Virus record (IMG/VR): IMGVR_UViG_3300049215_000771
Location: 62,001-126,000 of that record
Strand: one strand, 5' to 3'
DNA: 64,000 nt
Notes under the pieces: generated by a model
Seen by the model: only the letters and a program-made list of their open reading frames with translations
What the model was told of the DNA's origin: nothing
The model's database searches: none
Part shown: positions 3,239 through 59,466 of the stretch, piece after piece
Layout: each line of letters opens with the position of its first letter
Position numbering within the stretch: the first letter of the stretch is position 1
Program-made: the position numbers and the translations under genes

Positions 3239-3258
3239 CGGGTCTTACTGGAGGCGAC

Positions 3259-3735
3259 ATGCACGTTGGCGATTTTTTCCGGGGTGTGGCCCGGTTTATT
3301 GACGAGAAGTTTGTACACTACGCTGGCAGGCCGCTGGTACACTACAGGCTCCTGCCGGTCAGTGTCAAACATGATGCGGACGGGTTGTATTACCCTGAGT
3401 CCACCGAGAAGAAGTGGGAAAACAAACCTACCTTTCTGCGAGGTTTTTACGAGATTCCTGTCTCGACAGCGACCGGCCAGTTTGGTATTGATGCACCAGA
3501 CGAAATGCTTGTTGAGTTGGGATTTAACGACACTGTGAAGGCGCTCGGCAAAGTTCCTGGCATCGGCGATCTCTTCCTGGATTGCAACCATGACAAGTGG
3601 ATTGTCGTCCAAAGAAGCAGAAAAGATGACATGGTGCGAGGCCAAAACCGCCTGATTTTGACAGTTTGTCGGTTCCAGGAGTCTGTGACTACGGGAGGCA
3701 AGCAAGATGTCGAACATCATCAAGGAACTGTATGA
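3259..3735 (+). CDS. hypothetical protein, resembles T4 gp14-like neck/head-completion proteins
   Basis: ATG 3259 after GGAGG; LYYPE...QFGID..DE...GKVPGIGDLF pattern recalled from neck proteins. Confidence 0.4.
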   Translation: MHVGDFFRGVARFIDEKFVHYAGRPLVHYRLLPVSVKHDADGLYYPESTEKKWENKPTFLRGFYEIPVSTATGQFGIDAPDEMLVELGFNDTVKALGKVPGIGDLFLDCNHDKWIVVQRSRKDDMVRGQNRLILTVCRFQESVTTGGKQDVEHHQGTV

Positions 3736-4846
3736 CAAGGGACTGGCAAGCTGTGGCGGACATCACTGGATGCCCGACAACATGCACTACATCACGATGA
3801 TGGGTTCGGTCGCCTACGGCGTCAGCAACGACACATCCGACACCGACATTTACTCCTTCTGCATCCCGCCGAAGGACAACTTGTTCCCGCACCTTCGGGG
3901 CGAGATCGTCGGGTTCGGCGATGCCAAGCACGCCAACAACAGGTTCCGCAACCATCAGCAGCATCACGTCAAGGATGTTGGCGCTGAGAAGGAGTACGAT
4001 CTCAACGTCTACAACATCGTTGACTACTTCCAGTTGGTGATGGAAAACAACCCGAACATGATCGACAGTTTGTTCACTCCGCAGTTCTGTGTTCTGCACA
4101 GTACCCGGATCGGCCAGATGGTTCGTGAGGCTCGGAAAACTTTCCTTCACCGTGGCGCATGGCACGCCTTCAAGGGCTACAGCTATGCTCAACTGAAAAA
4201 GATGAGGCCGGGCGAGGAATTGGTCTGCCCGGAGTGTGAGCAGATCAGCAAGGGGTGGCATTCCAAGGACAACAAGTTCGAGGTTGCCTACGCCTTGATG
4301 CTCGACTTGTGGGCAGCCCTGGAGCGTGACCAGGGAACTTTGACGGACGAGGAACTGGACAAGTATTGCTTTTACTGTGCCAAGTCCAGGAAGGTTTCCA
4401 AGCTGGAGAAGCAGAAGGTCAACCGGCGTGTCGGGAAGCGAAAGGAATCTGTCGAGAAGTACGGATTCGACCCGAAATTCGCCTACCACGTTGTTCGGCT
4501 CCTGGGTGAAATCGAACAGATTCTCACCGAGGGTGACATCGACCTGCAACGGAACCGTGAGCAACTGAAGTCCATCCGGCGTGGCGAATGGACTCTCGAA
4601 CAAATCGAGAGTTACTTCGCCGACAAGGAACCCCAGCTTGAAACTCTCTACAACGAGAACAAGGCTGGGTTGCCGTGGGGTCCGAAGGACGGGGACTTGC
4701 AGAAGAACGTCAAGCAGCTTCTTTTCCATTGCCTGGAAGAACACTACGGTTCGCTTGACAAGTGTGTGGTCAATGTCGATGCCGCCGCAAACGCCCTTCG
4801 GGAGATCGAGGGAATCGTCGCTCGTTACAGAAAGGCGCTTGCATGA
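3707..4846 (+). CDS. Pol-beta superfamily nucleotidyltransferase (RlaP/PF10127-like)
   Basis: GSVAYGVSNDTSDTDI, NNPNMIDSLF, KFAYHVVRLL. Confidence 0.8.
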   Translation: MSNIIKELYDKGLASCGGHHWMPDNMHYITMMGSVAYGVSNDTSDTDIYSFCIPPKDNLFPHLRGEIVGFGDAKHANNRFRNHQQHHVKDVGAEKEYDLNVYNIVDYFQLVMENNPNMIDSLFTPQFCVLHSTRIGQMVREARKTFLHRGAWHAFKGYSYAQLKKMRPGEELVCPECEQISKGWHSKDNKFEVAYALMLDLWAALERDQGTLTDEELDKYCFYCAKSRKVSKLEKQKVNRRVGKRKESVEKYGFDPKFAYHVVRLLGEIEQILTEGDIDLQRNREQLKSIRRGEWTLEQIESYFADKEPQLETLYNENKAGLPWGPKDGDLQKNVKQLLFHCLEEHYGSLDKCVVNVDAAANALREIEGIVARYRKALA

Positions 4847-6265: not shown

Positions 6266-6291
6266 CGCTTCCTCACTCTAATATGTAGTTA

Positions 6292-6837
6292 TTGTACCTG
6301 GAGCATCAAATGATCCATTTTGATCGACAAATCGTTGTTGGAATAGTGTTGGATATTTCCATCCAGCATCGCAACGGCAGCAGACACATTGATATAGTGA
6401 AGTCGGGATTAGTTGATTTTTCAACTAAGTTGGGCCTGAACTGTGGCATTTATGTCGCTCATCCCAACAAACACGAAATGCCAAGACAACAAGGAGAAAG
6501 TGTGGCGGGCATCTTCTCTTATAGTGAGCCACTTGGTTTCCGTCCCGCTGATGCGTTTCTTCAGGCGACGGAGATGATCGCCGCTCAGGAAGCAGACGAG
6601 AAGTATGTGGTCCTGATTACCGACCGTTTCAGGCCGAGCAACCAGTACCTCAAACCTTTGTCGCTTAACGAAAGCAGGAAATATGGGTGTAAGTTCCTGT
6701 TTCTTGGTATAGGCGATACATATGACAGAAGTGACCTCAACAAGTTCAAGGAACATAAAGATTGCAGCGTCTATCATTTCGATGACCCGGCTCAGGTGGC
6801 ACAAAAAATTACCGAAACCATCATCATAGGTGTATAA
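6292..6837 (+). CDS. degenerate vWA-like domain protein
   Basis: IVLDIS, VVLITD and FLFLGIG strand pattern; MIDAS incomplete; start uncertain. Confidence 0.45.
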   Translation: MYLEHQMIHFDRQIVVGIVLDISIQHRNGSRHIDIVKSGLVDFSTKLGLNCGIYVAHPNKHEMPRQQGESVAGIFSYSEPLGFRPADAFLQATEMIAAQEADEKYVVLITDRFRPSNQYLKPLSLNESRKYGCKFLFLGIGDTYDRSDLNKFKEHKDCSVYHFDDPAQVAQKITETIIIGV

Positions 6838-14360: not shown

Positions 14361-14990
14361 ATGAGAATCAATTTCTTCGGCGGGCCTGGCTGCGGCAAAA
14401 GTACCATTGCCGCCAAAATCTTCTCCGAACTGAAGATCAGGAACTACAGCATCGAAATCGTTCATGAGTACATCAAGAAATGGGCGTACATGAAGCGGGT
14501 GCCGCAATCGTTCGATCAGGTGTACATTTTTGGCCAGCAGTTGCACGCTGAAGACCTGGTGTGTCAAAGCGGCGTGCAACACCTTGTCACGGACTCGCCT
14601 CTCTACATGCAACCGTTCTACGCAAGAACCTACAATGTGCCGATCTGGAACGAGTTGATGATGATCGCCAAGCAGTACGAAAGGATTCACCCTTCTCTCA
14701 ACATCTTTCTGAATCGGGCTGTTACCTATCAGCAGAACGGGCGCTATGAGACGCCCGAAGTAGCGCTGGACCGTGATGCCAAAATGCGAGAATTTCTGGA
14801 ACAGCAATGTATCCCCTTTGTCGTTTTCAAACCGACAGATTATACTGACATTCTCAATTATGTTGATCTCTACCTTTCCTCGCCGGATACCAAGGCCGAG
14901 GATTTGGTGAAGAAAGAACTCAAGAAAAAGCCCAAGCGAAAACGTCGTGACCCTGAAGTTGTGGATTACACGGAGTACAGTTGCTCATGA
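14361..14990 (+). CDS. P-loop kinase, NadR/AAA_28-like
   Basis: INFFGGPGCGKST, VHEYIK, LVTDSPL. Confidence 0.75.
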   Translation: MRINFFGGPGCGKSTIAAKIFSELKIRNYSIEIVHEYIKKWAYMKRVPQSFDQVYIFGQQLHAEDLVCQSGVQHLVTDSPLYMQPFYARTYNVPIWNELMMIAKQYERIHPSLNIFLNRAVTYQQNGRYETPEVALDRDAKMREFLEQQCIPFVVFKPTDYTDILNYVDLYLSSPDTKAEDLVKKELKKKPKRKRRDPEVVDYTEYSCS

Positions 14991-18836: not shown

Positions 18837-18930
18837 GGAAGCGAATGCCGTCTGGTGTAGGCCGCAGTCTTCAAAACTGTTGTAGGGTGTGAACAACACT
18901 CTAGGAGGGTTCGATTCCCTTTCGCTTCCG
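18837..18930 (+). tRNA. selC: tRNA-Sec-like, anticodon UCA
   Basis: 8-bp acceptor GGAAGCGA/TCGCTTCC, 5-bp T stem with TTCGATT loop, TGGT D-loop, loop CTTCAAA (TCA at 18871-18873), 8-bp variable arm, G73; no encoded CCA. Confidence 0.85.
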
Positions 18931-24775: not shown

Positions 24776-25002
24776 ACAACCGCTGGAACCCCGACATCCT
24801 CAACGACGTAATAGTGGAGGAAGAACCCGAAAACCCGTTCGACTTCGATGACAAGCCCCACCTGAGAACGGATAACTATCATCAGCACCGGAACCTGATG
24901 GGTATTTATGCCCTTCTCATCACGCTTGGCCTGTTTGTTTTTGTTTCGGTTTTTCTGGTCGGCATTGTTCATATAGTTGACCTGATTAAAACCATGAAAT
25001 GA
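24772..25002 (+). CDS. small membrane protein
   Basis: C-terminal hydrophobic helix; ATGA overlap. Confidence 0.55.
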   Translation: MNNRWNPDILNDVIVEEEPENPFDFDDKPHLRTDNYHQHRNLMGIYALLITLGLFVFVSVFLVGIVHIVDLIKTMK

Positions 25003-25011
25003 AAGGCAAAT

Positions 25012-25449
25012 ATGGCTAACAAGCATCTATTGTTCGTGTATGGCTCCCTGAAGCAAGGAATGATGCGGAACGTGGCGCTGCGTGGTCAGCGATACATCGG
25101 TATTGCTACCACGCAGCCCCATTACGCTATGTATCAACTCGCTGGCTACCCGGCCCTCATCAAGAACGACCATCCCGAAGCGGAAACATTGTTGAAAGAA
25201 GGCGAGGAAATCTACGGCGAGTTGTATGAACTTGACAACGCCTGTGTTATGGAACTTGACAAGATCGAGGCGTGTGACCAGGGTTTGTACGAAAGGCGTA
25301 ATGTGGACCTGAAGGAAATTTGGCCGTCATTCCTTCCTTCTTGTCAGGAAGTCTTTGGAGCATTTCACCAGAAGCGGGCCGAGACTTACTTCTACAAGAA
25401 ACCAATCGGTGGCGCACGCAACTGCGGCCATTTCTGGAGTCCACGCTGA
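25012..25449 (+). CDS. gamma-glutamylcyclotransferase (AIG2-like)
   Basis: LFVYGSLK, IYGELY, LDKIE...YER. Confidence 0.8.
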   Translation: MANKHLLFVYGSLKQGMMRNVALRGQRYIGIATTQPHYAMYQLAGYPALIKNDHPEAETLLKEGEEIYGELYELDNACVMELDKIEACDQGLYERRNVDLKEIWPSFLPSCQEVFGAFHQKRAETYFYKKPIGGARNCGHFWSPR

Positions 25450-25455
25450 TCCTGG

Positions 25456-25484
25456 TTTACATCCGTGCAAAAACGGAGTAAAAT
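25456..25484 (+). promoter_or_regulatory. sigma70-type promoter
   Basis: TTTACA-17-TAAAAT. Confidence 0.7.
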
Positions 25485-25490
25485 CAGGAC

Positions 25491-26084
25491 ATGGACAAGC
25501 TGAAAGTGCTGCAACTGCTGGTCAAACACGCACGCCCGGAAATCCTCAAGGAATACCGGCGTGATTCGTGTATTGCGTCTAGCGGCGTTGGCCTGGATGT
25601 CCTCGATCATTTCGGCATCCTGGGCGAGCCATTGGCTGTCAAGGTAATGATTTGGAACCCGGCCTTCGTTAAGCGTATTGAGGCCGGTCATCCGTTCCCC
25701 AAAGATCGAGCCGAGTTGGATGTTTGGGTAAAGGAGGATGGTGCTTGGAACGTCGGCCTTGGGCTAGGCGGCGATCCTGAACCGATGAAGTGGCCTGGGC
25801 ACCTTGTCATCATCGGCGAGCGACGATACTTGTTGGATTTGTCGCTCGATCAGGCTAGTCGTCCCCAACATAACATCAACTTGGATGTCCTGGGGGCGGA
25901 AATTACGGATGATTTCTTGTCTGGCAAAGAGCCTCGTATCGTGGAGATCGGTGGCAGTATCATAAGATTCATTGCATGGCCGGACAACTTGGGGTATACT
26001 AATTCACCAGACTGGATGTTTCGCACCCGACGAAACAGGATTGTCCAACGGGTGATTCGGAGCATCGAGGAGGAATTAGGATGA
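25491..26084 (+). CDS. hypothetical protein
   Basis: 197-aa ORF directly after the promoter. Confidence 0.65.
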   Translation: MDKLKVLQLLVKHARPEILKEYRRDSCIASSGVGLDVLDHFGILGEPLAVKVMIWNPAFVKRIEAGHPFPKDRAELDVWVKEDGAWNVGLGLGGDPEPMKWPGHLVIIGERRYLLDLSLDQASRPQHNINLDVLGAEITDDFLSGKEPRIVEIGGSIIRFIAWPDNLGYTNSPDWMFRTRRNRIVQRVIRSIEEELG

Positions 26085-26455
26085 ACCCTGTTATCGGCAT
26101 TGTGTTGCTGTCACTATTCATGGCGCTGTCGCTTGGTGCCCTGGCAACACTGGTCGTGAAATATAGAAACCGCTGGCTGACCCTCAAGGCCCGCCAAGAA
26201 GCGAATTTGGCTGTGGACTTGGACTTGGCGACAAGCGACCAACTCCTCGCCGAAATGCGTAAACGCCCAAGAACTTATCTCCTGTTGTTGCCCGTAAACA
26301 ACATGGAGGAAGGTTGCTTCGGCCTCTCGGTCGAAGTTCACAATATCGACGCCGTTCCTGCTGCTGGCATTCTCAAAGTGGCGGCTGCAATGGCTGAGAA
26401 GGAACTGCGTAAACAAGGTGTCGAACTACCCGATATGCCCGATCTACCGGAGTAA
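26081..26455 (+). CDS. membrane-anchored hypothetical protein
   Basis: N-terminal TM helix; ATGA overlap. Confidence 0.6.
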   Translation: MNPVIGIVLLSLFMALSLGALATLVVKYRNRWLTLKARQEANLAVDLDLATSDQLLAEMRKRPRTYLLLLPVNNMEEGCFGLSVEVHNIDAVPAAGILKVAAAMAEKELRKQGVELPDMPDLPE

Positions 26456-26458
26456 GTC

Positions 26459-26668
26459 ATGGCAGAACTATGGGGCGACAAAGATGACCCCGATCCGGGT
26501 CCGAACCCGATCTGGTCCATTGTCCGTATCGCTATTTTCACAGCCATCATCTTGGTTTTTTACTTCTTCTTTCTTCGCCCTACATTCGTTCGAGGGGCTG
26601 ATGTCGAACAAAATGTGCGAAAGCTGCCCGTGGAATCCAACATCGTACTGCCATCACAGGATGAATGA
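26459..26668 (+). CDS. small membrane protein
   Basis: Single hydrophobic segment. Confidence 0.5.
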   Translation: MAELWGDKDDPDPGPNPIWSIVRIAIFTAIILVFYFFFLRPTFVRGADVEQNVRKLPVESNIVLPSQDE

Positions 26669-26819
26669 TTGGGCATCACTTCTTGACGAACAAGGTTACA
26701 TCCGGCCTCACGGGTGTCATGAGCGGGAAGATACCGACACGCCTGCTCCCGAAAATGAATGTGTTGGTCACACCCTACATCTCAGAAAGCGAGACTGTCA
26801 TGGGGAACAAGTGGGTTGA
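26601..26819 (+). CDS. small Cys/His-rich protein (CxxCPW...CH...C)
   Basis: GAGGGG RBS; MSNKMCESCPW...HGCHE...ECVG. Confidence 0.5.
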   Translation: MSNKMCESCPWNPTSYCHHRMNDWASLLDEQGYIRPHGCHEREDTDTPAPENECVGHTLHLRKRDCHGEQVG

Positions 26820-27165
26820 CATTCACAACGATCCTGACTGGCAGCGCTACGAAAAACACGTTCGAGAGAACGTCGTCCCGAACCTCAAAGACAGTTCCAT
26901 CTTCATCTCCATCACGCCCAACGATGGAAAGCCGGACGTGAAATTCGCCGTGGAATTGGGTTTTGCCATTATGTATGATAAACCCATCATCCTCGCCATC
27001 CCGCCCGGCACGAAGGTTCCCGACAGGTTGGTGAAAGTTGCCGACCGGATCGTGGAAATCGACATGAACGACGAAGACAGCCGCAACCGCCTGATGGAAA
27101 CCATCATGGAGATGAGGGCGGAATTCGGCGAGCAGGATGGCGAACATCGTCACGGGGAAGAGTAA
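26800..27165 (+). CDS. hypothetical protein
   Basis: MGNKWVDI...FAVELGFAIMYDKPIIL, resembling part of the nucleoside deoxyribosyltransferase fold. Confidence 0.55.
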   Translation: MGNKWVDIHNDPDWQRYEKHVRENVVPNLKDSSIFISITPNDGKPDVKFAVELGFAIMYDKPIILAIPPGTKVPDRLVKVADRIVEIDMNDEDSRNRLMETIMEMRAEFGEQDGEHRHGEE

Positions 27166-27407
27166 TGAGTCGCATTGTTTTCGGCCTTGACATCGACAAA
27201 CATCTCCAAGATGTGAGAGATACCGTCAATGAGTTCCTTAGCATCGTTTTGATGTGCGGTCATTGGCCTCTTGAACTCAATCCGAGGCCCGCCAGTTTCA
27301 AGACGCTGAACAAGTACATGGAACTCAAATTCAGGATGGTGGACATGGAGATGTGGAAGGAATGGCTGGAGAAGGAATTTCCCAACATTTTCGATTTCGA
27401 CAACTGA
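27165..27407 (+). CDS. hypothetical protein
   Basis: 80-aa ORF, TAATG overlap. Confidence 0.55.
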   Translation: MSRIVFGLDIDKHLQDVRDTVNEFLSIVLMCGHWPLELNPRPASFKTLNKYMELKFRMVDMEMWKEWLEKEFPNIFDFDN

Positions 27408-27408
27408 A

Positions 27409-27492
27409 GGGACCGTAGCTCAATGGTAGAGCAGGGGATTTGAATTGTGTCTCATAATCCCTTGGTTGCTGGTTCGAGTCCAGCCGGTCCCA
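27409..27492 (+). tRNA. tRNA(CAU), Ile2-like, with 12-nt insertion in the anticodon arm
   Basis: Acceptor GGGACCG/CGGTCCC, D stem GCTC/GAGC, T arm GCTGG-TTCGAGT-CCAGC; anticodon stem GGGGA/TCCCT encloses 19 nt instead of 7 (extra TTTGAATTGTGT, 27439-27450) before CTCATAA. Confidence 0.8.
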
Positions 27493-27503
27493 CAGGAGAT
27501 ACC

Positions 27504-27713
27504 ATGAAGAAATTCTTCAAGTGGTATTGGGAACATATCAAGTCCGCCTATAGCTTCGGCGGCTATCCCCACCCATTGAATTGCCAGGGGAAAGAATTCT
27601 GGCGTGCCGAGTGGCGACATACCAAGTCCCTTTTTATCGTCGCCATGTTGCCGCAAGCCATTTTGTTCGGCTTGCTGGCGCTGGCGATCTTGGGGTGTCT
27701 GATCTTCCAATGA
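27504..27713 (+). CDS. small membrane protein
   Basis: AGGAG RBS; C-terminal TM helix. Confidence 0.55.
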   Translation: MKKFFKWYWEHIKSAYSFGGYPHPLNCQGKEFWRAEWRHTKSLFIVAMLPQAILFGLLALAILGCLIFQ

Positions 27714-28201
27714 ACCTCGAAGTTGTTCTGAAAGAAGTCTGCGGCGGCAACCTTGATGATTTTGGACGGTTGCTTCGTCGTGAGTTTCAATACAGGCATC
27801 CGACACTGGAGAAACACATGCGACCATTGGTTATCGACAACGACGCCAAGGCTAAAATCGCCGAAGTCATCGCCTACGCCGAGAATCACAAATACAACAA
27901 AGATTACATGGCGTTGCGCATGACAGGGAAGGCTGGCGTGCCTGGCGATATGGACTCCTACATCTGCTACCTCCAGGTTGGATACAAGTGCGTCTACACC
28001 ATCGAGGAGCAACCCGAACCGCTGGGCTGGTGTCATCACCTGTCAGTTTCGGTGGACAACCCGGCGAGAGTTCCCAGCATTCCTGCGGTCGAGTTGTTGA
28101 TGCAGGAATTCGGCATCACTCGCAAGCTGAAGGAAGAAGGGGTTCATGTGTGGATCGAGGATGTTACTCCGAAGGCGGTGAATATATTGGCGAAAATATG
28201 A
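27710..28201 (+). CDS. hypothetical protein
   Basis: ATGA overlap; WCHHLSVSV motif. Confidence 0.6.
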   Translation: MNLEVVLKEVCGGNLDDFGRLLRREFQYRHPTLEKHMRPLVIDNDAKAKIAEVIAYAENHKYNKDYMALRMTGKAGVPGDMDSYICYLQVGYKCVYTIEEQPEPLGWCHHLSVSVDNPARVPSIPAVELLMQEFGITRKLKEEGVHVWIEDVTPKAVNILAKI

Positions 28202-28259
28202 AGTCGATATTGAGTGAGCCAATATCCTGGCGTATAATCGTTCCACGGAGGGAAGAAAT

Positions 28260-29228
28260 ATGCGCATCACACAACGTATCCCCAGCCCTACAGAACAACG
28301 TGCCCGGAAAATACTCGAACGTCCTTTCCGGTTCATTTTCAATGCGGATTTCGATAACCCGAAGAAACGGAAGGAAATCCTTGGCGAGATGCCAGATATT
28401 GAAAAGTTCAACGAACAAAGAAAGAAGGTGGTTCAGCTTCGCAACGGAGACAAGATTGCCCCGGAAATGCGTCCATGCTACGAGGAACCATTGCTCACAC
28501 GAGAACAGGAGTACCATCTTTTCAGGAAGATGAATTACTTCAAGTATCGGGCCAAGAAGTTGATGGCGGACCTGAATCCGAGACGATGCAGCGATAAGCG
28601 CCTTGATAAAATCGAGTCGCTGCTGGAGGAAGCCAACAAGATCAGGAACCAGATCGGCAACTCCAACTTCCGGCTCGCTACCCAACTGCTCCGCAAGCAG
28701 TCCAGTTTCTACAGGGAACACAGTTTGACGGACGGCCTCCTGAGTGATGCCTACTTTGATGTGTTGAAGGCTATTGACTACTTCAACTTCAACCTGGGCA
28801 ACAAGTTCTCGACGTATTGCACCTGGGTACTGCGGAAGAATTTCAGCAGGGATTTGAAAAATCAGGCGAAGTATCAGGAACGCTTCACGACGGGAATGGA
28901 AGACCCGCTGAACGAAATCAAAGATGATGGTGATGGCTACAAGGAAGAAATCACTTACGAGAACAACCGCAAACTGGTTGACAAATTGTTGGAACTTCTG
29001 GCTGAAAGCGACTGCAACGGTGACGTGCAGCGCCAGGTGTATGCGATTGAGGAGTGGTTCGGACTACACGGAAAAGAACACCGCACCCTCGACGCCATCA
29101 GTCAAGATATGGACGTTACCAAAGAAAGAGTCCGACAACTCAAGGAGAAGGGGTTGCAGGTGATTCGGGAAAAAGTGAAGGAACTTGGAATCGTATTTGA
29201 GGAAGCTGATGAAGAAGAAGTGGCCTGA
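28260..29228 (+). CDS. sigma-70 family RNA polymerase sigma factor
   Basis: Region 2 SNFRL...LKAIDYFN...KFSTYCTW; region 4 RTLDAISQDMDVTKERVRQL; LFRKMNYFK. Confidence 0.88.
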   Translation: MRITQRIPSPTEQRARKILERPFRFIFNADFDNPKKRKEILGEMPDIEKFNEQRKKVVQLRNGDKIAPEMRPCYEEPLLTREQEYHLFRKMNYFKYRAKKLMADLNPRRCSDKRLDKIESLLEEANKIRNQIGNSNFRLATQLLRKQSSFYREHSLTDGLLSDAYFDVLKAIDYFNFNLGNKFSTYCTWVLRKNFSRDLKNQAKYQERFTTGMEDPLNEIKDDGDGYKEEITYENNRKLVDKLLELLAESDCNGDVQRQVYAIEEWFGLHGKEHRTLDAISQDMDVTKERVRQLKEKGLQVIREKVKELGIVFEEADEEEVA

Positions 29229-30189
29229 AGGCACGCAACTGACCGTCAATGAGAATTCTTGTGATTGGCCCAGCACCAAGGACAAGAAGGAGTGGCTGTG
29301 TTCGGCGGCATTCCCGGCACCTGACAGTGCCGGGATTCGTCCTTTGTACATCACTGGTCGGGGCCGGGTAAAATCTACCTGGTTCGCATCCGGGTACGGA
29401 CCCACGGCCCTGGAAGCGGAAGATGCCTGTTGGGAAAATTACAACAGCATCATCAACTGCAAGCATGATCTTGAGAGGATCGCTCACGTCGATCTTCCCG
29501 ACGACCAGCCCAAGGTTTACTTGTTGGATGGTGATGCTGTTTGTAAAACGTGTCAATTGTATCTTCCTTTCTACTACATGGATGACCGGCTGCATAAGTC
29601 GATGTGCCTGGCCCATCGTGGACATGAACACCAGAAGCGGAAGTATGGCGACCGCCCTTACATCGTGCATCCCCGCCAGGTCTACACGAAAACTGCATTC
29701 TGGAAGCCGAAACGCCCGGAAGAAGAGCGCATCGTGATGGGTTGCGCCGCCTGGATGCACGACCTGAAAGAAGATTGTCAAAGCAAGGACTCCAACCCTT
29801 TCATCTCGGATGATGAGATGAGGGAAGCAGGCGGCGATCAATCGTTTCAGTTGGTGTACTGGCTCACGAACCCATCGAAAGGCGTGAAGAAGCCGAGGGC
29901 TTACCGGAAGCAGATGGATCGGGAGCATATCGCTGTTGCCCCGCACCCGGCGAAGATCATCAAGATGTTCGACCGTATCTGCAATCTGAATGATTTGTAC
30001 GAATGCAACGACATGGATTTCTTGGCTCTCTACGCCAGCGAGAGCCGGCTGTTGTGGGATGTCCTCAAGGATGCAGACGAGAAGCTGGCACGGGACATGC
30101 TCGCTGTGATCGAGCAAGTCGAGAGGAGAGCGCAAAATGGCATCAACACCAGGAGTTCGCAAGACCCACAAAATCTATCACAAGACTAA
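29209..30189 (+). CDS. HD-domain hydrolase, RelA/SpoT (Mesh1/SAH)-like, with extra N-terminal domain
   Basis: HQKRKYGDRPYIVHP, AAWMHDLKED, KMFDRICNL. Confidence 0.8.
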   Translation: MKKKWPEGTQLTVNENSCDWPSTKDKKEWLCSAAFPAPDSAGIRPLYITGRGRVKSTWFASGYGPTALEAEDACWENYNSIINCKHDLERIAHVDLPDDQPKVYLLDGDAVCKTCQLYLPFYYMDDRLHKSMCLAHRGHEHQKRKYGDRPYIVHPRQVYTKTAFWKPKRPEEERIVMGCAAWMHDLKEDCQSKDSNPFISDDEMREAGGDQSFQLVYWLTNPSKGVKKPRAYRKQMDREHIAVAPHPAKIIKMFDRICNLNDLYECNDMDFLALYASESRLLWDVLKDADEKLARDMLAVIEQVERRAQNGINTRSSQDPQNLSQD

Positions 30190-31348
30190 CCCCAACAGCT
30201 TGCCGAATCCCTACAATTGGGAACTTCGCATCAGGTTGTTGGACCAGGCCGGCGAATTTATCGAGATGGTCAGCCAGATCGCTGCATTCCGTCTCCTGAA
30301 AGGTGATGCCGCCGAACTGGTTCTTGTGAAGGAACCAACCATCCAGTTGAAGGTTCCTACTGAGGAGTGGCGACCCTTCGCTAAAGGTGCGCCTCAAAAG
30401 CACCAAGCGAAGTGGCACAACTGGTTGCACGCCCGCCGCACCATCTTGTACGGCAATTATCACATCTTGTCTCCTGAAGGCCATCTGATGTTCCATTGCA
30501 ACAATCAGAAGGCTTTGTGGTATCTCAACCGTGACCTGGTTGAGATCGTCGCCCACGATCCGCCCACCCTCCAGTTGAAGTTTATTCCTGGCGGGCCGGG
30601 GCACGTCGGCGATGACTACTACCTGACTCCGAAGATCAATCGCTGTGTGGTCTGTGGTGGTACGAACGGCCTGAATCGCCATCACGTTGTTCCGAGTTGC
30701 TACAGACGCTACATGGGATTGGACATCAAAAGCCATTCCTACCACGACGTTTTGTTGTTGTGCCTGGATTGCCACGAGTCCTACGAGGTCGAGGCCAATA
30801 GGCTGAAACATGAGATCGGGGTGGAGTACAACTGCCCGACGCATTGCATCTACGACCGACAAACAGGCGAGATGGTGTTGTACGATCATGACAACGGCAG
30901 GGCCGTTCAAGCCGCCATCGCCCTGGTCCGCAACGGAGAACGGATTCCTGAACCCCGCCGCCAGGAGTTGATGTCCCATATCTCGTCATGGCTAGGCCGA
31001 GAGGCTACCCACGATGACGTGCTGGAAATTTCCAAGCGGGGGCATCGCCACAGGAAGATGGAAGGCTGCTACGACCACGGTGAATACATCGTCCGCCAGA
31101 TGAAAAATCTGGCAGATGTACAAAAATTCATCGAGCGATGGCGACATCACTTCCTGGCGGTGATGCAGCCCAAGTACCTGCCGGCGAATTGGGACGTGGA
31201 GAAGGCAATTCTGCCGGAAGATTACGAACCTATCGGCGGTTCGCTGAGTCTTCACCATGAGCGGAGCCGAGAGTACGAGGGTCCGAAGCGTCCTTATTGG
31301 AGGAATCCTGATGGGGATGGTCAAACACTACCTGATGGAATACTGTGA
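30137..31348 (+). CDS. HNH-like protein resembling the C-terminal domain of eukaryotic EXD2
   Basis: LYGNY.ILSPEG...KALWYL...YYL...CVVCG...HHVVP.CYRR...SHSYHDVLLLCLDCH; RWRHHFL..MQPKYLP. Confidence 0.7.
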   Translation: MASTPGVRKTHKIYHKTNPNSLPNPYNWELRIRLLDQAGEFIEMVSQIAAFRLLKGDAAELVLVKEPTIQLKVPTEEWRPFAKGAPQKHQAKWHNWLHARRTILYGNYHILSPEGHLMFHCNNQKALWYLNRDLVEIVAHDPPTLQLKFIPGGPGHVGDDYYLTPKINRCVVCGGTNGLNRHHVVPSCYRRYMGLDIKSHSYHDVLLLCLDCHESYEVEANRLKHEIGVEYNCPTHCIYDRQTGEMVLYDHDNGRAVQAAIALVRNGERIPEPRRQELMSHISSWLGREATHDDVLEISKRGHRHRKMEGCYDHGEYIVRQMKNLADVQKFIERWRHHFLAVMQPKYLPANWDVEKAILPEDYEPIGGSLSLHHERSREYEGPKRPYWRNPDGDGQTLPDGIL

Positions 31349-31526
31349 GGCGACCTGTCCCGGCGACTACGACGCCCAGGATGAGTTGTTCGAGCAGATC
31401 GTCAGCGGCGAGGTCAAGGTGTCGCTGGAGGAAATGAAGGTGGTGGTTGACCGTTACAGGGGGAGGGATCATGTACAAGAAATACCCAAGAACCCTCCAC
31501 CTTCCGTGGAGTCCGGGCCGCAGTGA
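31311..31526 (+). CDS. small acidic hypothetical protein
   Basis: GGAGGA RBS. Confidence 0.5.
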   Translation: MGMVKHYLMEYCEATCPGDYDAQDELFEQIVSGEVKVSLEEMKVVVDRYRGRDHVQEIPKNPPPSVESGPQ

Positions 31527-32109
31527 CGACGACAAGGTTCTCGACGGAGTTGAACACTTCGTCGGGAAGGAAATCATCGTTACTGAGAAGCTGGATGGGG
31601 AAAACACCACCATGTACCGGGATCATATTCACGCCCGGTCGATTGATTCCAAGCATCACCCTTCCCGGACCTGGGTGAAAGCCGAGCATGGTCGTATTCA
31701 ATCCGACATTCCAGAAGGATGGCGGATTTGTGGCGAGAACGTGTACGCCAAGCATTCGATTCATTATCGAGGCTTGACGGCGTACTTCTATGTTTTCGGC
31801 ATCTACAACGACCAAGACCTGTGCTTGTCGTGGAACGACACGGAGGAATACGCCACCCTTCTCGGCCTGCAAATGGCCCCGGTTTTATACCGTGGCTCGT
31901 GGGACGAGAAGGAAGTGAGGGATTGTTGGACGGGCGAATCTTGCTACGACGCAGAACAGGAAGGCTACGTTGTTCGTTTGGCGAGTTCCTTCAAATACGA
32001 GGACTTTGCCATCTCCGCAGCGAAATTCGTCAGGGCGCATCATGTCCAGACCGACGAGTTCTGGATGTCGCAACCTGTGGTTCCCAACCTGCTCGCCCCG
32101 ATGGAGTAA
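31471..32109 (+). CDS. RNA ligase family protein
   Basis: KYPRTLHLPWS, TEKLDGEN, ICGENV, EGYVVR, AKFVR. Confidence 0.85.
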   Translation: MYKKYPRTLHLPWSPGRSDDDKVLDGVEHFVGKEIIVTEKLDGENTTMYRDHIHARSIDSKHHPSRTWVKAEHGRIQSDIPEGWRICGENVYAKHSIHYRGLTAYFYVFGIYNDQDLCLSWNDTEEYATLLGLQMAPVLYRGSWDEKEVRDCWTGESCYDAEQEGYVVRLASSFKYEDFAISAAKFVRAHHVQTDEFWMSQPVVPNLLAPME

Positions 32110-33694: not shown

Positions 33695-35356
33695 ATGGGA
33701 CGTAAACTCGAAAAGTCCACCTACCCATCCGGCCACGGCCCGAACGATTTCCAGTGTTTCGGCCCGCCCGCCACCGAAGACGGGAATTTCGACACCTGCA
33801 AGATCGCCGACATGGGTTCCTTCTCCCAAGAGGAGAAAGATTCCAACAAGTATTATCACGCCGCCGTCGTCAAGTCGAAGATCAACGGCAACTACTACAC
33901 CTACTTCGAGTGGGGCCGGGTCGGGGCGTCCAAACCTGCTTTCCAGTTTGTCGAGTGTGGCAGCGAGGCCGACGCCCAGCGGGAATTCGCCGATCAGTGC
34001 CACGAGAAGAACGACAAGCGTGGCGTTTGGACAACCGTGGCGGGCCATCGCACGCTGACGGCCAAACCCAAGAAGGACGTGTATCTCGTCCGCCAACTCG
34101 CCACCCGTTCCACGGGTCTGCCCGATGCCAAAACCATCAAGCACACTGAGGGCGCAAAGCCGAAGCCGAAGCCCGGCAAGCCCGACGATGCCAGCGCTAC
34201 CGACAAGCCGACGAAGAAGGAAGCGAAACCAGCGGCCCCAGCCCGTCGTGCCGATCCAGTCACCAGTAAATTGCTTCAGGATTTGATCGGCGGCACGATC
34301 TCCTACACCCGTGGGAGCATGGCCGACGACTCGATTCCGACGCAAAATGCCATCGACATCGCTCGTGATGTTCTCACCGAGGCCGAGAAGCGACTGTTGA
34401 AGGTCGGCAACAGCCTCGATGACCAGATCGCCGACAAGGAACTTCGCCAGTTGTCCGGGGAACTGTACCGTCGCATCCCGAAGAAGAAGCCGGTTGGGAC
34501 GCCGGACAAGGTGTGGATTCTGTCCAGCGAGAATATCTTCTCCTGGCGGAACGACCTGGACGCCTTCGAGTCGGCGTTGTCGGCCCAGGCCGGCATTGAC
34601 GAACAGGCCGGTCAGGTTGCCGATCCCTTCCACGGCCTGCCCCTCACGATGGAATACATCGACCCGAAAACGGAACTCGGCAAGTTCCTCTACTTCTGGT
34701 GGCCGAAGGCGACGGCCAATCGCCACTACCACCTGAAAGACATGAAGATCAAGAATATGTGGAAGGTGGACCGCTTCGGCGACCCGGAGAAGGTTCGCCG
34801 CTCGCAGGACCGCATCGCCACCGAGATCGGCAAGGCGGCGCTGAAGGAACGGCCCTTGTTCCAGCCGTCCGAACGCTACGATGTTCCCGACATCAACGAG
34901 CGCAAGCTGTTCGGTCAGACCAACACGGCGCTGTTGTTTCACGGCACCCGTTCCGTCAACGTGAAGGGCATCTTGGAGAAGTCGCTGTTGCTGCCGAAGC
35001 AACTGGTCGGCGTTTCCATCAACGGGGCCATGTTTGGCCCTGGTCTGTATTGGGCCGATGACTGGAAGAAGTCGGCAGGCTACACCAGCTTGTCGGGTTC
35101 GCTCTACTCGGCGGGCTATGGCGGGGTTGCCGGTCGCCATGCCTTCATGTTCGCCGCCGATGTCGTCGTGGGGCAGCCACACGTTGCTCCTGGGCCGCAC
35201 GGTTATACCAGCCCGCCGAAGGGCCATCACTGTGTCTTCGGTATGGGCCGCAACCACACCAGCAGCCGCCAGAACAGCGGCGTGGAGAACAACGAGTGGA
35301 TCGTGTTCTCCGGTGAACAGTGCCGTCTCCGCTACCTGGCGGAATTCACGGCGTAA
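33695..35356 (+). CDS. WGR-domain poly(ADP-ribose) polymerase-like ADP-ribosyltransferase
   Basis: FEWGRVG (WGR); helical regulatory segment LSGELYRRIP; catalytic LLFHGT (H), MFGPGLYWAD (Y), NNEWIVF (E). Confidence 0.9.
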   Translation: MGRKLEKSTYPSGHGPNDFQCFGPPATEDGNFDTCKIADMGSFSQEEKDSNKYYHAAVVKSKINGNYYTYFEWGRVGASKPAFQFVECGSEADAQREFADQCHEKNDKRGVWTTVAGHRTLTAKPKKDVYLVRQLATRSTGLPDAKTIKHTEGAKPKPKPGKPDDASATDKPTKKEAKPAAPARRADPVTSKLLQDLIGGTISYTRGSMADDSIPTQNAIDIARDVLTEAEKRLLKVGNSLDDQIADKELRQLSGELYRRIPKKKPVGTPDKVWILSSENIFSWRNDLDAFESALSAQAGIDEQAGQVADPFHGLPLTMEYIDPKTELGKFLYFWWPKATANRHYHLKDMKIKNMWKVDRFGDPEKVRRSQDRIATEIGKAALKERPLFQPSERYDVPDINERKLFGQTNTALLFHGTRSVNVKGILEKSLLLPKQLVGVSINGAMFGPGLYWADDWKKSAGYTSLSGSLYSAGYGGVAGRHAFMFAADVVVGQPHVAPGPHGYTSPPKGHHCVFGMGRNHTSSRQNSGVENNEWIVFSGEQCRLRYLAEFTA

Positions 35357-40224: not shown

Positions 40225-40253
40225 TTTACAAGGCATGATTCTTGGGGTATGAT
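40225..40253 (+). promoter_or_regulatory. sigma70-type promoter
   Basis: TTTACA-17-TATGAT. Confidence 0.7.
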
Positions 40254-40259
40254 ACAGCC

Positions 40260-41489
40260 ATGTTCAATCTCTCCGAGGCGCTGGAGGCTCTGAAGGGCCA
40301 CGACGAGTTTGCAATCAAGGCTTATGACGGCCTGGTTACGCTTGACTACATTTTATGCTTCCCAGGCTCGTTCGATGCCGCAGAAGCCGAAATCGTGGCT
40401 CGTGGAGAGGCACAGGCTCACCGGGATGCAGAAATTCGCCGGAACTGTCGAGGGGTGACTTTCGACGAAAAGACTGGCGAGATCGTGTCTTTGCCGCTGC
40501 ACAAGTTTTTCAACATCGGCCAGACCGAGCAAACGCAGTTCCGCCACTTAACGTCCTGCAAGGCACGGATTTACGAGAAGATGGATGGTTCGATGATCCA
40601 CTTCTTCGTCCACCCGCACCGTCAGGAGTTGCTGGCGTCCACCTGCCGCTCGACGCAAACGCCCCAGGCGCAGGAGTCGCTGGGGCTGGCGAAGAAGAAC
40701 CAGCTTGTCTACGGCAAGATTCTCGCTATCATCGGTGAGGGTTGGACTCCGGTTTTCGAGTACGTCGCTGCACACAACCAGATCGTGGTGCAATATCCAC
40801 GTCCCCGGTTGGTGTATCTGATCTCTCGTCACCGGAAGACGGGCGAGTATAAGTTCCACGAAGGGTTCCCGGATACGGCAACGTATTTTGAGTTTCCCTT
40901 CCAGGACATCAACAACTACTTGGACCGCAAGGAATTCGAGGGCTACGTTTGCCACCTGGAATTCACGGAAGATGTTTCGTGCATCAAGGCGAAGAAGGGT
41001 GACAAGACGATTGTGAAGGCCAAGACGCCCTGGTACTTGGAGCGTCACCGGGCAGTGGATGCCCTGATGAGGCCGACCTACAAGTTGTACCAGGTCGTGT
41101 TCGATGGTGTCATGGACGACCTGTTGCCAACGGCTCCTGATCGGTTCAAGCCGAAGCTGGTTGGAATCTACGAAGAGGCGCAGCGTGATCTACTGAACGA
41201 GCAGCGCCGTGTTGAGAAGTTGTTCGATCTTTCGTTGGCGGCAGTGGAATCCGTTTGGAGCAGGACGTTCTCTCACGGAAAGCTGCCGGAACGCAAGATG
41301 GATCGGGTTCTCCGCAAGGCGTTCGTTGAGTACATCCAGCAGCACTACAAGTCGGATTTCTCTCTGCTGATGGCCCTGTATCTCGGCAATGACCCGTCTC
41401 CCACCATCAAGGACCGATTGATGGAAGGGTACAAGCTAAAGTACCCAAATCGGCTTTTTGCTGATTTGGAAGAAGAAGCTGTCGCATGA
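40260..41489 (+). CDS. T4 Rnl1-like RNA ligase
   Basis: CRGVTFD, LHKFFN, YEKMDGSMI, VFEY, EGYV, KAKTPWY. Confidence 0.88.
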   Translation: MFNLSEALEALKGHDEFAIKAYDGLVTLDYILCFPGSFDAAEAEIVARGEAQAHRDAEIRRNCRGVTFDEKTGEIVSLPLHKFFNIGQTEQTQFRHLTSCKARIYEKMDGSMIHFFVHPHRQELLASTCRSTQTPQAQESLGLAKKNQLVYGKILAIIGEGWTPVFEYVAAHNQIVVQYPRPRLVYLISRHRKTGEYKFHEGFPDTATYFEFPFQDINNYLDRKEFEGYVCHLEFTEDVSCIKAKKGDKTIVKAKTPWYLERHRAVDALMRPTYKLYQVVFDGVMDDLLPTAPDRFKPKLVGIYEEAQRDLLNEQRRVEKLFDLSLAAVESVWSRTFSHGKLPERKMDRVLRKAFVEYIQQHYKSDFSLLMALYLGNDPSPTIKDRLMEGYKLKYPNRLFADLEEEAVA

Positions 41490-55579: not shown

Positions 55580-55589
55580 GGATTATGTC

Positions 55590-59463: not shown

Positions 59464-59466
59464 CAA

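What the first reader, a model, noticed from the sequence alone, without database searches (positions are those of the whole stretch)
27409..27492. tRNA(CAU) with a 12-nt insertion in the anticodon arm: mini-intron or switchable tRNA
Seen: an otherwise intact Ile2-like tRNA (G27-U43, GCTGG T arm) whose anticodon stem encloses 19 nt. Removing 12 nt (TTTGAATTGTGT or an equivalent register) restores CTCATAA. The insert can pair with the anticodon region (ATTGTG with CATAAT), masking it. It is far too short for a group I intron, and I could not see a clean bulge-helix-bulge. Inference: it could be excised and re-ligated by a phage nuclease plus one of the RNA ligases in this window, protect against anticodon nucleases until spliced, or be a decaying gene. 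The perfect stems elsewhere argue against decay.
Basis: partly seen in the sequence, partly recalled or inferred. Interest (0 to 1): 0.72.

Follow-up and report, generated by a model that had tools for sequence, protein, structure and literature searches.

The report
Interrupted isoleucine tRNA gene in huge phage
A giant bacteriophage from a moss microbiome carries an otherwise perfect isoleucine (CAU) tRNA gene with 12 extra bases that hide its anticodon, and related phages carry different short, mostly 21-base hairpin inserts in the same gene, a kind of tRNA interruption with no known removal mechanism in bacteria or their viruses.

Summary
Window 27409-27492 is a real tRNA (Rfam 64.9 bits). 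It has 12 extra bases, TTTGAATTGTGT (27439-27450), between the 5' strand of the anticodon stem and an intact CTCATAA loop. The insert is in the DNA: it appears in two independent assemblies and a 43x Logan contig.

The body is of the tRNA-Ile2 (CAU, lysidine) type. The genome is a 533-kb phage of a bacterium (sigma-70, ClpX).

In relatives, the syntenic tRNA upstream of the same sigma gene takes one of two forms:
- Uninterrupted in six.
- Carrying a 21-nt insert at positions 32/33, 34/35 or 35/36 in four.

This genome's own tRNA-Lys has such a 21-nt insert too. All five share one layout: 2 nt, a 4-bp helix with a 6-nt loop, then 5 nt. The helix shows compensatory changes. Exact removal always restores the canonical loop, so the family looks like removable mini-introns.

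The 12-mer lacks that hairpin. It pairs with the anticodon loop instead, exactly where the family's 3' half would lie. It looks like a 21-nt element minus 9 nt.

- Leading reading (0.42): a crippled half-element giving a non-decoding RNA.
- Rivals: genuine splicing (0.3), or a function while unspliced (0.2).

No EndA, RtcB, RNase III, BHB or group I features were found. Only unspliced RNA was seen.

The parts
27409..27492 (+). tRNA gene of the tRNA-Ile2 (anticodon CAU) type, 84 nt, no encoded CCA
   Evidence: Rfam RF00005 64.9 bits; ARAGORN. The D arm and anticodon arm are identical to 21 uninterrupted tRNA(CAU) genes from metagenome contigs, many of which end in an encoded CCA. One of these (L060) is 81% identical to E. 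coli genes annotated tRNA-Ile that have a CAT anticodon.
27434..27438 (+). 5' strand of the anticodon stem (GGGGA)
   Evidence: Sequence; Rfam alignment.
27439..27450 (+). The 12-nt insert TTTGAATTGTGT, between tRNA positions 31 and 32
   Evidence: A 12-column gap in the alignment with syntenic orthologs. The sequence is unique in the 533-kb genome.
27451..27457 (+). Intact canonical anticodon loop CTCATAA (anticodon CAT at 27453-27455)
   Evidence: Identical to the loop of all uninterrupted orthologs and of E. coli tRNA-Ile(CAU). Predicted to be paired with the insert.
27458..27462 (+). 3' strand of the anticodon stem (TCCCT)
   Evidence: Sequence; Rfam alignment.
27165..27407 (+). Upstream 80-aa ORF; its stop codon ends one base before the tRNA
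   Evidence: ORF list. The only homolog found is itself.
27494..27713 (+). AGGAGA ribosome-binding site (27494-27499) followed by a 69-aa ORF (ATG at 27504), starting 2 nt after the tRNA; the tRNA sits inside an operon
   Evidence: Sequence; ORF list. No promoter-like site lies directly upstream of the tRNA. An RNA-library contig spans 27382-27532.
28260..29228 (+). Sigma-70-like gene, used as the synteny anchor for finding orthologous tRNAs
   Evidence: Pfam Sigma70_r2/r4; relatives; tree.
31447..32109 (+). RNA ligase of the Rnl2 family (PF09414)
   Evidence: Pfam E 2.3e-33; genome search. A gene hitting the same Pfam family lies downstream of sigma in two relatives, including one whose tRNA is uninterrupted.
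40242..41489 (+). RNA ligase of the T4 Rnl1 family (PF09511)
   Evidence: Pfam E 7e-16; genome search.
3707..4846 (+). RlaP, an RNA-ligase-associated Pol-beta nucleotidyltransferase
   Evidence: Pfam PF10127 E 7e-13. Described as typical of jumbo-phage RNA repair in PMC7824862.

Best explanation
This is a phage tRNA-Ile2 (CAU) gene whose anticodon loop is interrupted by a 12-nt sequence specific to this lineage.

The gene lies in an operon, and an RNA-library contig carries it with the insert and both flanks; DNA carry-over in that library cannot be excluded.

Predicted: the RNA keeps the cloverleaf, but bases 1-5 of the insert pair with U33, C34, A35, A37 and A38. The anticodon arm becomes a long hairpin and CAU is hidden. 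As it stands the RNA cannot decode.

Inferred: the insert is a truncated member of a family of 21-nt hairpin mini-inserts that repeatedly interrupt this same gene in the phage's clade, and also this genome's tRNA-Lys.
- Family layout: 2 nt, a 4-bp helix closing a 6-nt loop, then 5 nt.
- The 12-mer supplies positions 1-12 of that layout: UU, UGAA, UUGUGU.
- The tRNA's own CUCA and UAAUC sit where positions 13-21 would be.
- A 9-nt slippage deletion between a former (U/C)UCA helix strand and the loop's CUCA would produce exactly this sequence.

The rule that fits all five 21-nt inserts places the cuts 2 nt 5' and 5 nt 3' of the helix. Applied here it would cut after A31 and after C40. That would not restore CUCAUAA.

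So this copy is most likely a recently crippled gene that gives a non-decoding tRNA-like RNA. AUA decoding would be left to the phage's tRNA-Ile(UAU) and the host.
For: - The insert is real and fixed in the population.
- Six syntenic orthologs are uninterrupted: G001, G002, G005, L253, L265 and, by gap length, probably the 93%-identical relative P0003, whose gap is 83 nt against 96 nt here.
- Four orthologs and the genome's tRNA-Lys carry 21-nt inserts with one shared layout. The 4-bp helix is paired in 20 of 20 cells, has four pair types at its outer pair, and 1 of 500 shuffles reaches the observed score.
- In the target, the insert pairs with the loop at the same index positions as the family helix. 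A31-U39 and G30-C40 take the place of the family's exon/3'-flank helix.
- 12 = 21 - 9. The 6-nt stretch UUGUGU matches the L251 loop UUGUCU at 5 of 6 positions.
- No geometry of the family type can excise 12 nt, because only 5 nt would be left for the hairpin (arithmetic).
- There is a backup for AUA: a tRNA-Ile(UAU) at genome 27217-27315, conserved in G001. AUA is only 8.4% of Ile codons.
- Some relatives have no detected tRNA beside the sigma gene (L261, L047, L048).
- Only the unspliced form was seen in RNA libraries.
Against: - Everything outside the insert is perfect. The body is identical at 71 of 72 positions to the bodies in L260 and L251, although their sigma proteins are only 72-74% identical. 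So either the change is very recent or the RNA is still under selection.
- The insert is fixed in several samples, which argues against a strongly harmful change.
- Sequence similarity of the 12-mer to the first 12 nt of the family is not significant (shuffle p 0.09). The truncation model rests on geometry and arithmetic, not on demonstrated homology.
- The cutting rule of the family is itself inferred, not observed.
- Mature tRNAs are poorly captured by the RNA libraries used, so the lack of a spliced form says little.
Confidence: 0.42

Rival explanations
1. It is a genuine mini-intron. The 12 nt are cut out of the precursor and the halves are sealed in the anticodon loop by a phage RNA ligase (Rnl1 or Rnl2 family). 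This gives a normal tRNA-Ile2 that the host TilS then modifies. Until then the insert masks the anticodon, for example from host anticodon nucleases.
For: - Exact removal restores the loop found in every ortholog.
- The clade evidently tolerates inserts in this very gene while keeping its body and all seven loop bases intact, 35 of 35 bases in five interrupted genes.
- L252 and L260 share an insert at the same site that has diverged at 8 of 21 positions. The split loop around it is unchanged.
- The target's body is 71/72 identical to L260 and L251, and the insert is fixed.
- The genome holds four RNA ligase genes and RlaP.
- There is a precedent of unexplained tRNA introns in Lak megaphages (PMC6784885).
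Against: - No EndA, RtcB or RNase III in the genome.
- No bulge-helix-bulge, and the position is not canonical.
- The 12-mer lacks the hairpin, the length and the purine-rich 3' end of the inserts that look removable.
- RNA ligases are common in jumbo phages regardless of introns.
- An Rnl2-family ligase gene also lies downstream of sigma in L253, whose tRNA is uninterrupted.
- No spliced joint was seen, though this is weak evidence.
Confidence: 0.3
2. It works unspliced as a tRNA-like RNA with a closed anticodon arm. It is processed by RNase P and RNase Z and CCA is added, but it does not decode. It might act as a decoy or sponge for an enzyme that recognises tRNA-Ile2: TilS, an anticodon nuclease, or the nuclease that cuts the 21-nt inserts.
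For: - The body is conserved and the insert fixed.
- The same phage clade keeps other tRNA-like genes with long, closed anticodon arms that no single excision turns into a normal tRNA. One is a 103-nt family conserved in G000, G001 and G002. Another is a ~50-nt module found in five tRNA-like genes.
- The target's arm mimics the geometry of the 21-nt elements.
Against: - It is present in one lineage only, with no conservation of the 12-mer.
- No partner protein was identified.
- The loop CTCATAA is preserved, although a non-decoding RNA would not need it.
Confidence: 0.2
3. It is an assembly or sequencing artefact, or the gene is really a different tRNA: ARAGORN's Phe-GAA with a long variable arm, or Ser-UGA with a 37/38 intron.
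For: ARAGORN reports Phe(GAA) without its intron option and Ser(UGA) with it.
Against: - Identical sequence in a 43x Logan contig and in an independent ENA scaffold.
- The Phe reading needs a mismatched stem, U37 and an unpaired 16-nt variable region.
- The Ser reading lacks the long variable arm of Ser tRNAs.
- Orthologs and cellular homologs fix the register as CAU.
Confidence: 0.03

Closest known systems
'Enigmatic' tRNA introns of Lak megaphages (Devoto et al. 2019, PMC6784885)
   Same: - A phage of over 500 kb that infects bacteria.
- Large tRNA gene sets.
- Some tRNA genes interrupted in the anticodon loop by sequences that are not group I introns.
- No known splicing mechanism.
- Presence and absence of the insert vary between related genomes.
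   Different: - The Lak intron whose sequence I read (tRNA-Tyr) is predicted at tRNA positions 37-129, about 93 nt long. The paper says another may itself encode a tRNA.
- Where the same Lak intron occurs it is typically identical across cohorts.
- Here the inserts are 12 or 21 nt long.
- They sit at 31/32, 32/33, 34/35 or 35/36 of one and the same gene.
- They differ in sequence between relatives.
- The phage is unrelated to Lak in composition (53% GC against 26%).
Archaeal and eukaryal tRNA introns (bulge-helix-bulge motif, EndA/Sen endonuclease, RtcB or Trl1 ligase)
   Same: - Short protein-spliced introns in or near the anticodon loop.
- Non-canonical positions and gain and loss are known in archaea.
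- The intron often pairs with the anticodon.
   Different: - The host is a bacterium.
- No EndA or RtcB in the phage.
- No two 3-nt bulges separated by 4 bp. A 12-nt intron cannot hold a strict BHB.
- The relaxed bulge-helix-loop form would need a 3-nt bulge where only U36 bulges, and its cut sites would not restore a 7-nt loop.
Bacterial and phage group I introns in tRNA anticodon loops
   Same: They sit in the anticodon loop of bacterial-type tRNA genes, and related genomes differ in whether they carry the intron.
   Different: Group I introns need a catalytic core of roughly 200 nt or more. Here there are 12 or 21 nt, and no Rfam intron or ribozyme family is hit.
T4 anticodon-loop break repair (host PrrC nuclease; phage Pnkp and Rnl1)
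   Same: The phage encodes Rnl1- and Rnl2-family ligases and RlaP. These enzymes could seal a nick in an anticodon loop, which is the step any splicing of this tRNA would need.
   Different: That pathway repairs a single cut made by a host defence nuclease. It does not remove a segment. No segment-excising nuclease is known or was found.
Pseudo-tRNAs in large phage tRNA arrays
   Same: A tRNA gene with one disabling change in the anticodon loop, in a genome with some 60 tRNA genes and backup decoding.
   Different: There is no other defect. The same gene is hit by structured inserts in sister lineages, which ordinary decay does not predict.

Membership tests
tRNA (Rfam RF00005) | Cloverleaf with conserved D and T arm sequence, scoring above the gathering threshold | tested here: met
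   64.9 bits against a threshold of 29, with model positions 1-71 all matched. All four stems are perfect.
tRNA-Ile2 (CAU, lysidine type) | CAU anticodon in a body resembling known tRNA-Ile(CAU) rather than tRNA-Met | tested here: met
   After removal of the 12 nt the loop is CTCATAA. The D arm and anticodon arm are identical to 21 uninterrupted tRNA(CAU) genes. One of those (L060) is 81% identical to E. coli genes annotated tRNA-Ile with a CAT anticodon, G27-U43 and a GCTGG T stem.
tRNA-Ile2 (CAU, lysidine type) | C34 converted to lysidine by TilS, and charging by IleRS | not testable with these tools
   There is no TilS in the phage genome; the best PP-loop hit scores 15 bits, below the cut-off. 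Host TilS would be needed.
Group I intron | Catalytic core (P3-P9) of about 200 nt or more | tested here: not met
   The insert is 12 nt. There are no Rfam hits other than tRNA at E up to 1.
BHB intron (archaeal/eukaryal type) | Two 3-nt bulges separated by a 4-bp helix that carry the splice sites | tested here: not met
   Minimum-free-energy and suboptimal folds show a continuous helix with a single 1-nt bulge (U36) and an 8-nt loop. Twelve nt cannot hold a strict BHB.
BHB intron (archaeal/eukaryal type) | Splicing endonuclease (EndA/Sen) and RtcB or Trl1 ligase available | tested here: not met
   PF01974 and PF01139 give no match at E up to 1 in the 533-kb genome, while the control genomes do match. 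The host is bacterial (sigma-70, ClpX).
21-nt hairpin mini-inserts of this phage clade (defined here) | Lies in the anticodon loop, and exact removal restores the canonical 7-nt loop | tested here: met
21-nt hairpin mini-inserts of this phage clade (defined here) | Length of 21 nt with the layout 2 nt, 4-bp helix, 6-nt loop, 4-bp helix strand, 5 nt | tested here: not met
   The insert is 12 nt and has no hairpin of its own. The 3' strand of the equivalent helix is the tRNA's own C32-A35, with 3 of 4 pairs formed.
21-nt hairpin mini-inserts of this phage clade (defined here) | Sequence similarity to other members | tested here: inconclusive
   Profile score 26 of 60 at offset 0. Shuffle p 0.09, or 0.23 over all offsets; uniform-random p 0.026. 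The 5' end UUUG matches L264, and UUGUGU matches the L251 loop at 5 of 6 positions.
Decaying pseudogene | Further disabling changes: broken stems, or lost invariant bases | tested here: not met
   None are present. The body is 71/72 identical to L260 and L251. This does not exclude a very recent inactivation.

The most novel reading that the evidence does not exclude
A clade of huge phages of bacteria carries a previously undescribed class of tRNA mini-introns. These are 21-nt hairpin cassettes (2 nt, a 4-bp helix with a 6-nt loop, 5 nt) that sit at different positions of the anticodon loop of tRNA-Ile2 and tRNA-Lys.

On this reading a nuclease measures from the hairpin and cuts them out at the RNA level. 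The cuts leave ends that the phage's Rnl1 or Rnl2 ligases can seal.

The cassettes come and go between sister phages. One possible driver is that an insert hides a conserved tRNA gene or its anticodon from endonucleases or anticodon nucleases used in phage-phage or host-phage conflict.

The 12-nt insert of this window is either a minimal working form or a half-element of that system.
Probability: 0.3. Interest if true: 0.85.

Novelty: new variant of a known kind. Interest (0 to 1): 0.7.

Why it matters
Bacteria and their viruses are thought to interrupt tRNA genes only with self-splicing group I introns. Short protein-spliced tRNA introns are regarded as a hallmark of archaea and eukaryotes. 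The only earlier hint to the contrary is the unexplained introns of Lak megaphages.

Here one orthologous tRNA gene shows at least four independent short interruptions within a small clade. They share a constant length and a covarying hairpin, and the split loop around them is perfectly preserved. That combination is hard to explain unless the RNA is repaired after transcription.

If so, an unknown RNA-cutting activity in bacteria or phages awaits discovery. It may be coupled to the RNA ligases that jumbo phages carry in numbers. The system would be directly testable with a 94-nt transcript.

For annotation, such genes are called 'undetermined' or mis-typed by standard tRNA finders. ARAGORN calls this one Phe or Ser, so phage tRNA repertoires are being miscounted.

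If instead this 12-mer is a dead half-element, it is a rare snapshot of how such an insert is lost.

Tried and rejected
- Exact-pattern scans of IMG/VR for the target's arm with a variable gap found nothing.
- Scans for the ~50-nt module found nothing and only chance hits plus G001.
- Scans for the core of the 103-nt family found only chance hits plus G001.
- A scan for the target's T arm and acceptor found three unrelated phage tRNAs, all uninterrupted.
- A scan of GTDB genomes with a sigma alignment returned only distant cellular sigma factors.
- A phage-collection BLAST of 5 kb around the tRNA hit only the 3' half of a tRNA-Met in two Stenotrophomonas phages.
- The 80-aa neighbour gene has no homolog other than itself.
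- Four relatives (P0003, P0005, P0007, P0011) were located, but their DNA could not be fetched. Only gene spacing could be used for them.
- Known ribozymes and RNA families are rejected: there is no Rfam hit besides tRNA in any interrupted gene at E up to 1.
- BHB and BHL motifs, EndA, RtcB and a phage RNase III are all rejected.
- A donor copy of the 12-mer elsewhere in the genome is rejected: it is unique up to one mismatch.
- An internal promoter is rejected.
- Homology of the 12-mer to the family by sequence alone was tested and is not significant.
- An RNase III-like staggered cut was considered for the 21-nt inserts. The predicted 3' overhangs are 1, 2, 2 and 3 nt and the stems are short, so this stays only a lead.

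Full report
**What is there.** Window 27409-27492 (+) is a tRNA gene. ARAGORN finds it, and Rfam's tRNA model scores it 64.9 bits over all 71 model positions. That alignment has 14 nt where the model has 2 in the anticodon loop.

Read from the sequence, all four stems are perfect. The anticodon stem GGGGA/TCCCT encloses 19 nt: TTTGAATTGTGT (27439-27450) followed by CTCATAA (27451-27457).

The gene sits one base after the stop codon of an 80-aa ORF. It ends two bases before the AGGAGA ribosome-binding site of a 69-aa ORF. No promoter-like site lies in front of it, so it lies inside an operon.

**Where it comes from.** The window is bases 62001-126000 of a 532,729-bp IMG/VR virus record with 52.7% GC.
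- Rfam finds 59 tRNA matches in the record.
- Sigma-70, ClpX-like, PRPP synthetase, Rnl1 and RlaP genes mark it as a huge phage of a bacterium.
- Public runs that hold it are moss and plant metagenomes.

**Is the insert real?** Yes.
- A 71-kb Logan contig at 43x from the probable source sample is identical over 24800-30500, with no indel variants.
- An ENA scaffold from another assembly, seen in three samples, is identical through the tRNA.
- An RNA-library contig of 151 nt at depth 2 covers 27382-27532 without change. This is the unspliced form with both flanks.
- No joint that skips the insert was seen. However, the coverage is sparse, DNA carry-over cannot be excluded, and such libraries capture mature tRNAs poorly.

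**Which tRNA, and which register.** Seven-base loops with U33 and a purine at 37 can be made in several registers (CAU, UAU, UGU, UGA). ARAGORN itself wavers between Phe-GAA and Ser-UGA. Comparison settles the question.

Relatives found through the sigma gene 0.8 kb downstream have a tRNA in the same place. G001, G002 and G005 carry uninterrupted tRNA(CAU) genes with the loop CTCATAA. The alignment puts a clean 12-column gap directly before CTCATAA in the target.

A metagenome scan that allowed 0-30 nt between the two halves of the arm found 21 contigs. All had zero spacing. Many end in an encoded CCA, as cellular tRNA genes do. One of these is 81% identical to E. coli genes annotated tRNA-Ile that have a CAT anticodon, G27-U43 and a GCTGG T stem.

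**The unexpected part: the same gene is interrupted differently in sister phages.** A protein search with the sigma factor gave a ladder of relatives from 93% down to about 45% identity. Where DNA could be fetched, the syntenic tRNA reads as follows. All are confirmed as tRNAs by Rfam at 55.7-75.5 bits.

| Locus | Sigma identity | Anticodon loop | Insert position |
|---|---|---|---|
| L260 | 74% | C\|GTAGGCTTATCAGCCTTTCGA\|TCATAA | 32/33 |
| L252 | 71% | C\|GTCGGCCTGATAGCCGCCGGA\|TCATAA | 32/33 |
| L264 | 57% (60% by BLASTP) | CTC\|TTTGGCTTAGTTGCCATCAGA\|ATAA | 34/35 |
| L251 | 72% | CTCA\|AAGGGCTTGTCTGCCCGCAAG\|TAA | 35/36 |
| L253 | 70% | uninterrupted | none |
| L265 | 57% | uninterrupted | none |

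The target genome's own tRNA-Lys(CUU) (genome 13184-13277) reads CTC|TTGTGCTAGAAAGCACCCAAG|TTAA. Its relatives in G001 and G002 have CTCTTAA.

All five inserts are exactly 21 nt and share one layout: 2 nt, a 4-bp helix closing a 6-nt loop, then 5 nt.
- On the ungapped alignment A2 the helix is paired in 20 of 20 cells.
- The outer pair takes four forms (GC, AU, CG, UA) and the next pair has one compensatory change.
- Only 1 of 500 shuffles reaches the observed covariation score, and all slid controls fall to 25-55% paired.
- A second short helix joins the exon base(s) at the 5' junction and the first insert base(s) to insert positions 18-21. Its sequence changes with the insertion site.

Removing the 21 nt restores the ortholog's loop in every case. 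All 35 loop bases of the five interrupted genes are intact. L252 and L260 share the site, but their inserts differ at 8 of 21 positions.

On the sigma tree the interrupted genes form a well-supported clade of nine. Four outgroups are uninterrupted, and the state differs even between sisters (L252 against L253; L260 against L251).

The bodies of the target, L260 and L251 are identical at 71 of 72 positions, although their sigma proteins are only 72-74% identical.

**What this says about the family.** The following features together argue that the 21-nt inserts are removed from the RNA. This is inference; no spliced RNA was observed.
- constant length
- a covarying hairpin
- a junction helix that tracks the site
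- preservation of the split loop and of the tRNA body

They are not group I introns, by size and by the lack of any Rfam hit. They are not BHB introns either. The 4-bp helix cannot be the central BHB helix, because exon 1 would then have to include it.

The genome has no EndA, RtcB or RNase III. The simplest rule that fits all five is a cut 2 nt 5' and 5 nt 3' of the helix. The enzyme is unknown.

The phage's four RNA ligase genes and RlaP could do the sealing. But such genes are usual in jumbo phages as a defence against anticodon nucleases (PMC7824862). An Rnl2-family ligase gene also lies downstream of sigma in L253, whose tRNA is uninterrupted.

**What this says about the 12-mer.** It does not belong to the family by its defining features, since it has neither the 21 nt nor its own hairpin. 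No rule of that geometry can excise 12 nt.

Yet its predicted fold copies the family's geometry, with the tRNA itself as the 3' half. Number the insert i1-i12 = UU UGAA UUGUGU.
- U3, G4 and A5 pair with A35, C34 and U33, where the family has i16, i15 and i14. A6 faces C32.
- UUGUGU is the 6-nt loop. It matches the L251 loop at 5 of 6 positions.
- U36 bulges where the family has 1-2 unpaired bases.
- i1 pairs with A38, as i1 pairs with i19 in L260 and L264.
- A31-U39 and G30-C40 stand where the exon bases pair with i20 and i21.

Since 12 = 21 - 9, a 9-nt slippage deletion gives exactly the observed sequence. It would run between a former 3' helix strand (U/C)UCA and the loop's CUCA, in a 21-nt element at 31/32. 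This is my inference. A profile test of sequence similarity alone is not significant (p 0.09).

Under the family rule this RNA would be cut after A31 and after C40, which destroys it. The closest relative (P0003, 93%) has an 83-nt gap where the window has 96 nt. That fits a 72-nt tRNA with the same 11-nt spacer, so it probably lacks the insert. The change would then be recent, which explains the perfect body without invoking function.

**Weighing the readings.**

Crippled half-element giving a non-decoding RNA: 0.42. This fits several facts:
- the geometry
- the arithmetic
- the lack of any removal route
- the backup tRNA-Ile(UAU)
- the rarity of AUA (8.4% of Ile codons)
- the absence of a detected tRNA in some relatives

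Genuine splicing: 0.30. This is favoured by the fixation of the insert, the strong conservation of this gene in the clade, and the clade's evident ability to live with inserts here.

Function while unspliced: 0.20. The clade keeps other tRNA-like genes with closed, extended anticodon arms.

Artefact or another tRNA identity: about 0.03.

**Comparison with what is known.** The nearest precedent is the 'enigmatic introns' of Lak megaphage tRNAs. The one whose sequence I read, in tRNA-Tyr, is predicted at positions 37-129 and is about 93 nt long. Where the same Lak intron occurs it is typically identical across cohorts (PMC6784885). The huge-phage survey PMC7162821 does not mention tRNA introns. 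Two further literature searches found no description of short hairpin inserts in phage tRNAs.

I therefore file the finding as a new variant of a known kind: interrupted phage tRNA genes. The 21-nt family is the more important discovery, and the 12-mer is an atypical member of it.

Noticed in passing
Genome 13184-13277 (outside the window; L034:31-124): This phage's tRNA-Lys(CUU) has a 28-nt anticodon loop, CTC|TTGTGCTAGAAAGCACCCAAG|TTAA. The 21-nt hairpin insert has the same layout as those in relatives' tRNA-Ile2 genes. Its 5' half is identical at 24 of 24 positions to the tRNA-Asn of G001 and G002, but it has A73 and CUU.
   Followed up: partly
L251:3183-3275, L252:3288-3381, L260:657-749, L264:1665-1757: Syntenic tRNA-Ile2 genes of related phages carry 21-nt inserts at 35/36, 32/33, 32/33 and 34/35. 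The inserts share a covarying 4-bp helix and a 6-nt loop.
   Followed up: yes
Genome about 880-1000, 4872-4971, 6212-6337, 14780-14905, 34759-34889; also L051:10184-10307 and L054:18134-18256: A conserved module of about 50 nt (..GTCTCAGCGCC AATTTG TCC-TTCG-GGA ATGC .. GGGATTACAT) replaces or fills the anticodon arm of five tRNA-like genes. Diverged copies with compensatory changes in the UUCG hairpin (TCC/GGA against GGC/GCC) occur in G001 and G002. No single excision gives a canonical loop, and there is no Rfam hit.
   Followed up: partly
Genome 25614-25717; L051:5509-5612; L054:13019-13122: A tRNA-like gene of about 103 nt has a 36-nt anticodon 'loop' that folds into a long arm. It is conserved in three genomes, with an invariant core GGTTTTATAGTTGCC and covarying outer helices (GCTG/CAGC against TCCG/CGGA).
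   Followed up: partly
Window 18837-18930 and 59393-59540: There is a tRNA-Sec-like gene (anticodon UCA, 76.5 bits to RF01852). There are also two adjacent tRNAs with anticodon CUA, which would be opal and amber suppressor-type tRNAs. Yet this phage's long ORFs read through with the standard code.
   Followed up: no
Genome 27217-27315 (L037): A tRNA-Ile(UAU) has a normal anticodon arm and a 27-nt variable arm. It is conserved in G001. It would read AUA without lysidine.
   Followed up: partly
Genome 55504-55586, 494717-494799 (-), 498892-499001 (-): Further odd tRNA genes in the same genome: an 18-nt anticodon loop with a GGCC/GGTC hairpin, a 12-nt insertion in the D loop, and a 43-nt anticodon loop with a 6-bp inner helix. 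The only canonical readings for the first and third give A34 anticodons (AAG, AGU).
   Followed up: partly
Window 27165-27404 (protein P0001): The same protein is on record on a contig of 673,178 bp, longer than the 532,729-bp IMG/VR record, which is classed as 'provirus'. The record may be a trimmed part of a larger genome.
   Followed up: no
Contig carrying P0007 (no DNA held), genes at 2713-3255 (-): In one relative a gene with a weak HNH_2 endonuclease hit lies directly beside the tRNA slot. Free-standing homing endonucleases that target tRNA gene regions are known from T4 (SegB; from my own knowledge). This could bear on why the gene is an insertion hot spot.
   Followed up: no
Window 33695-35356: A 553-aa protein has a WGR domain and a poly(ADP-ribose) polymerase catalytic domain.
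   Followed up: no
Window 27447-27713: A GTG inside the 12-nt insert opens a frame that runs through the tRNA in phase with the downstream 69-aa ORF. This is probably coincidence, because the ATG at 27504 has its own AGGAGA site.
   Followed up: no
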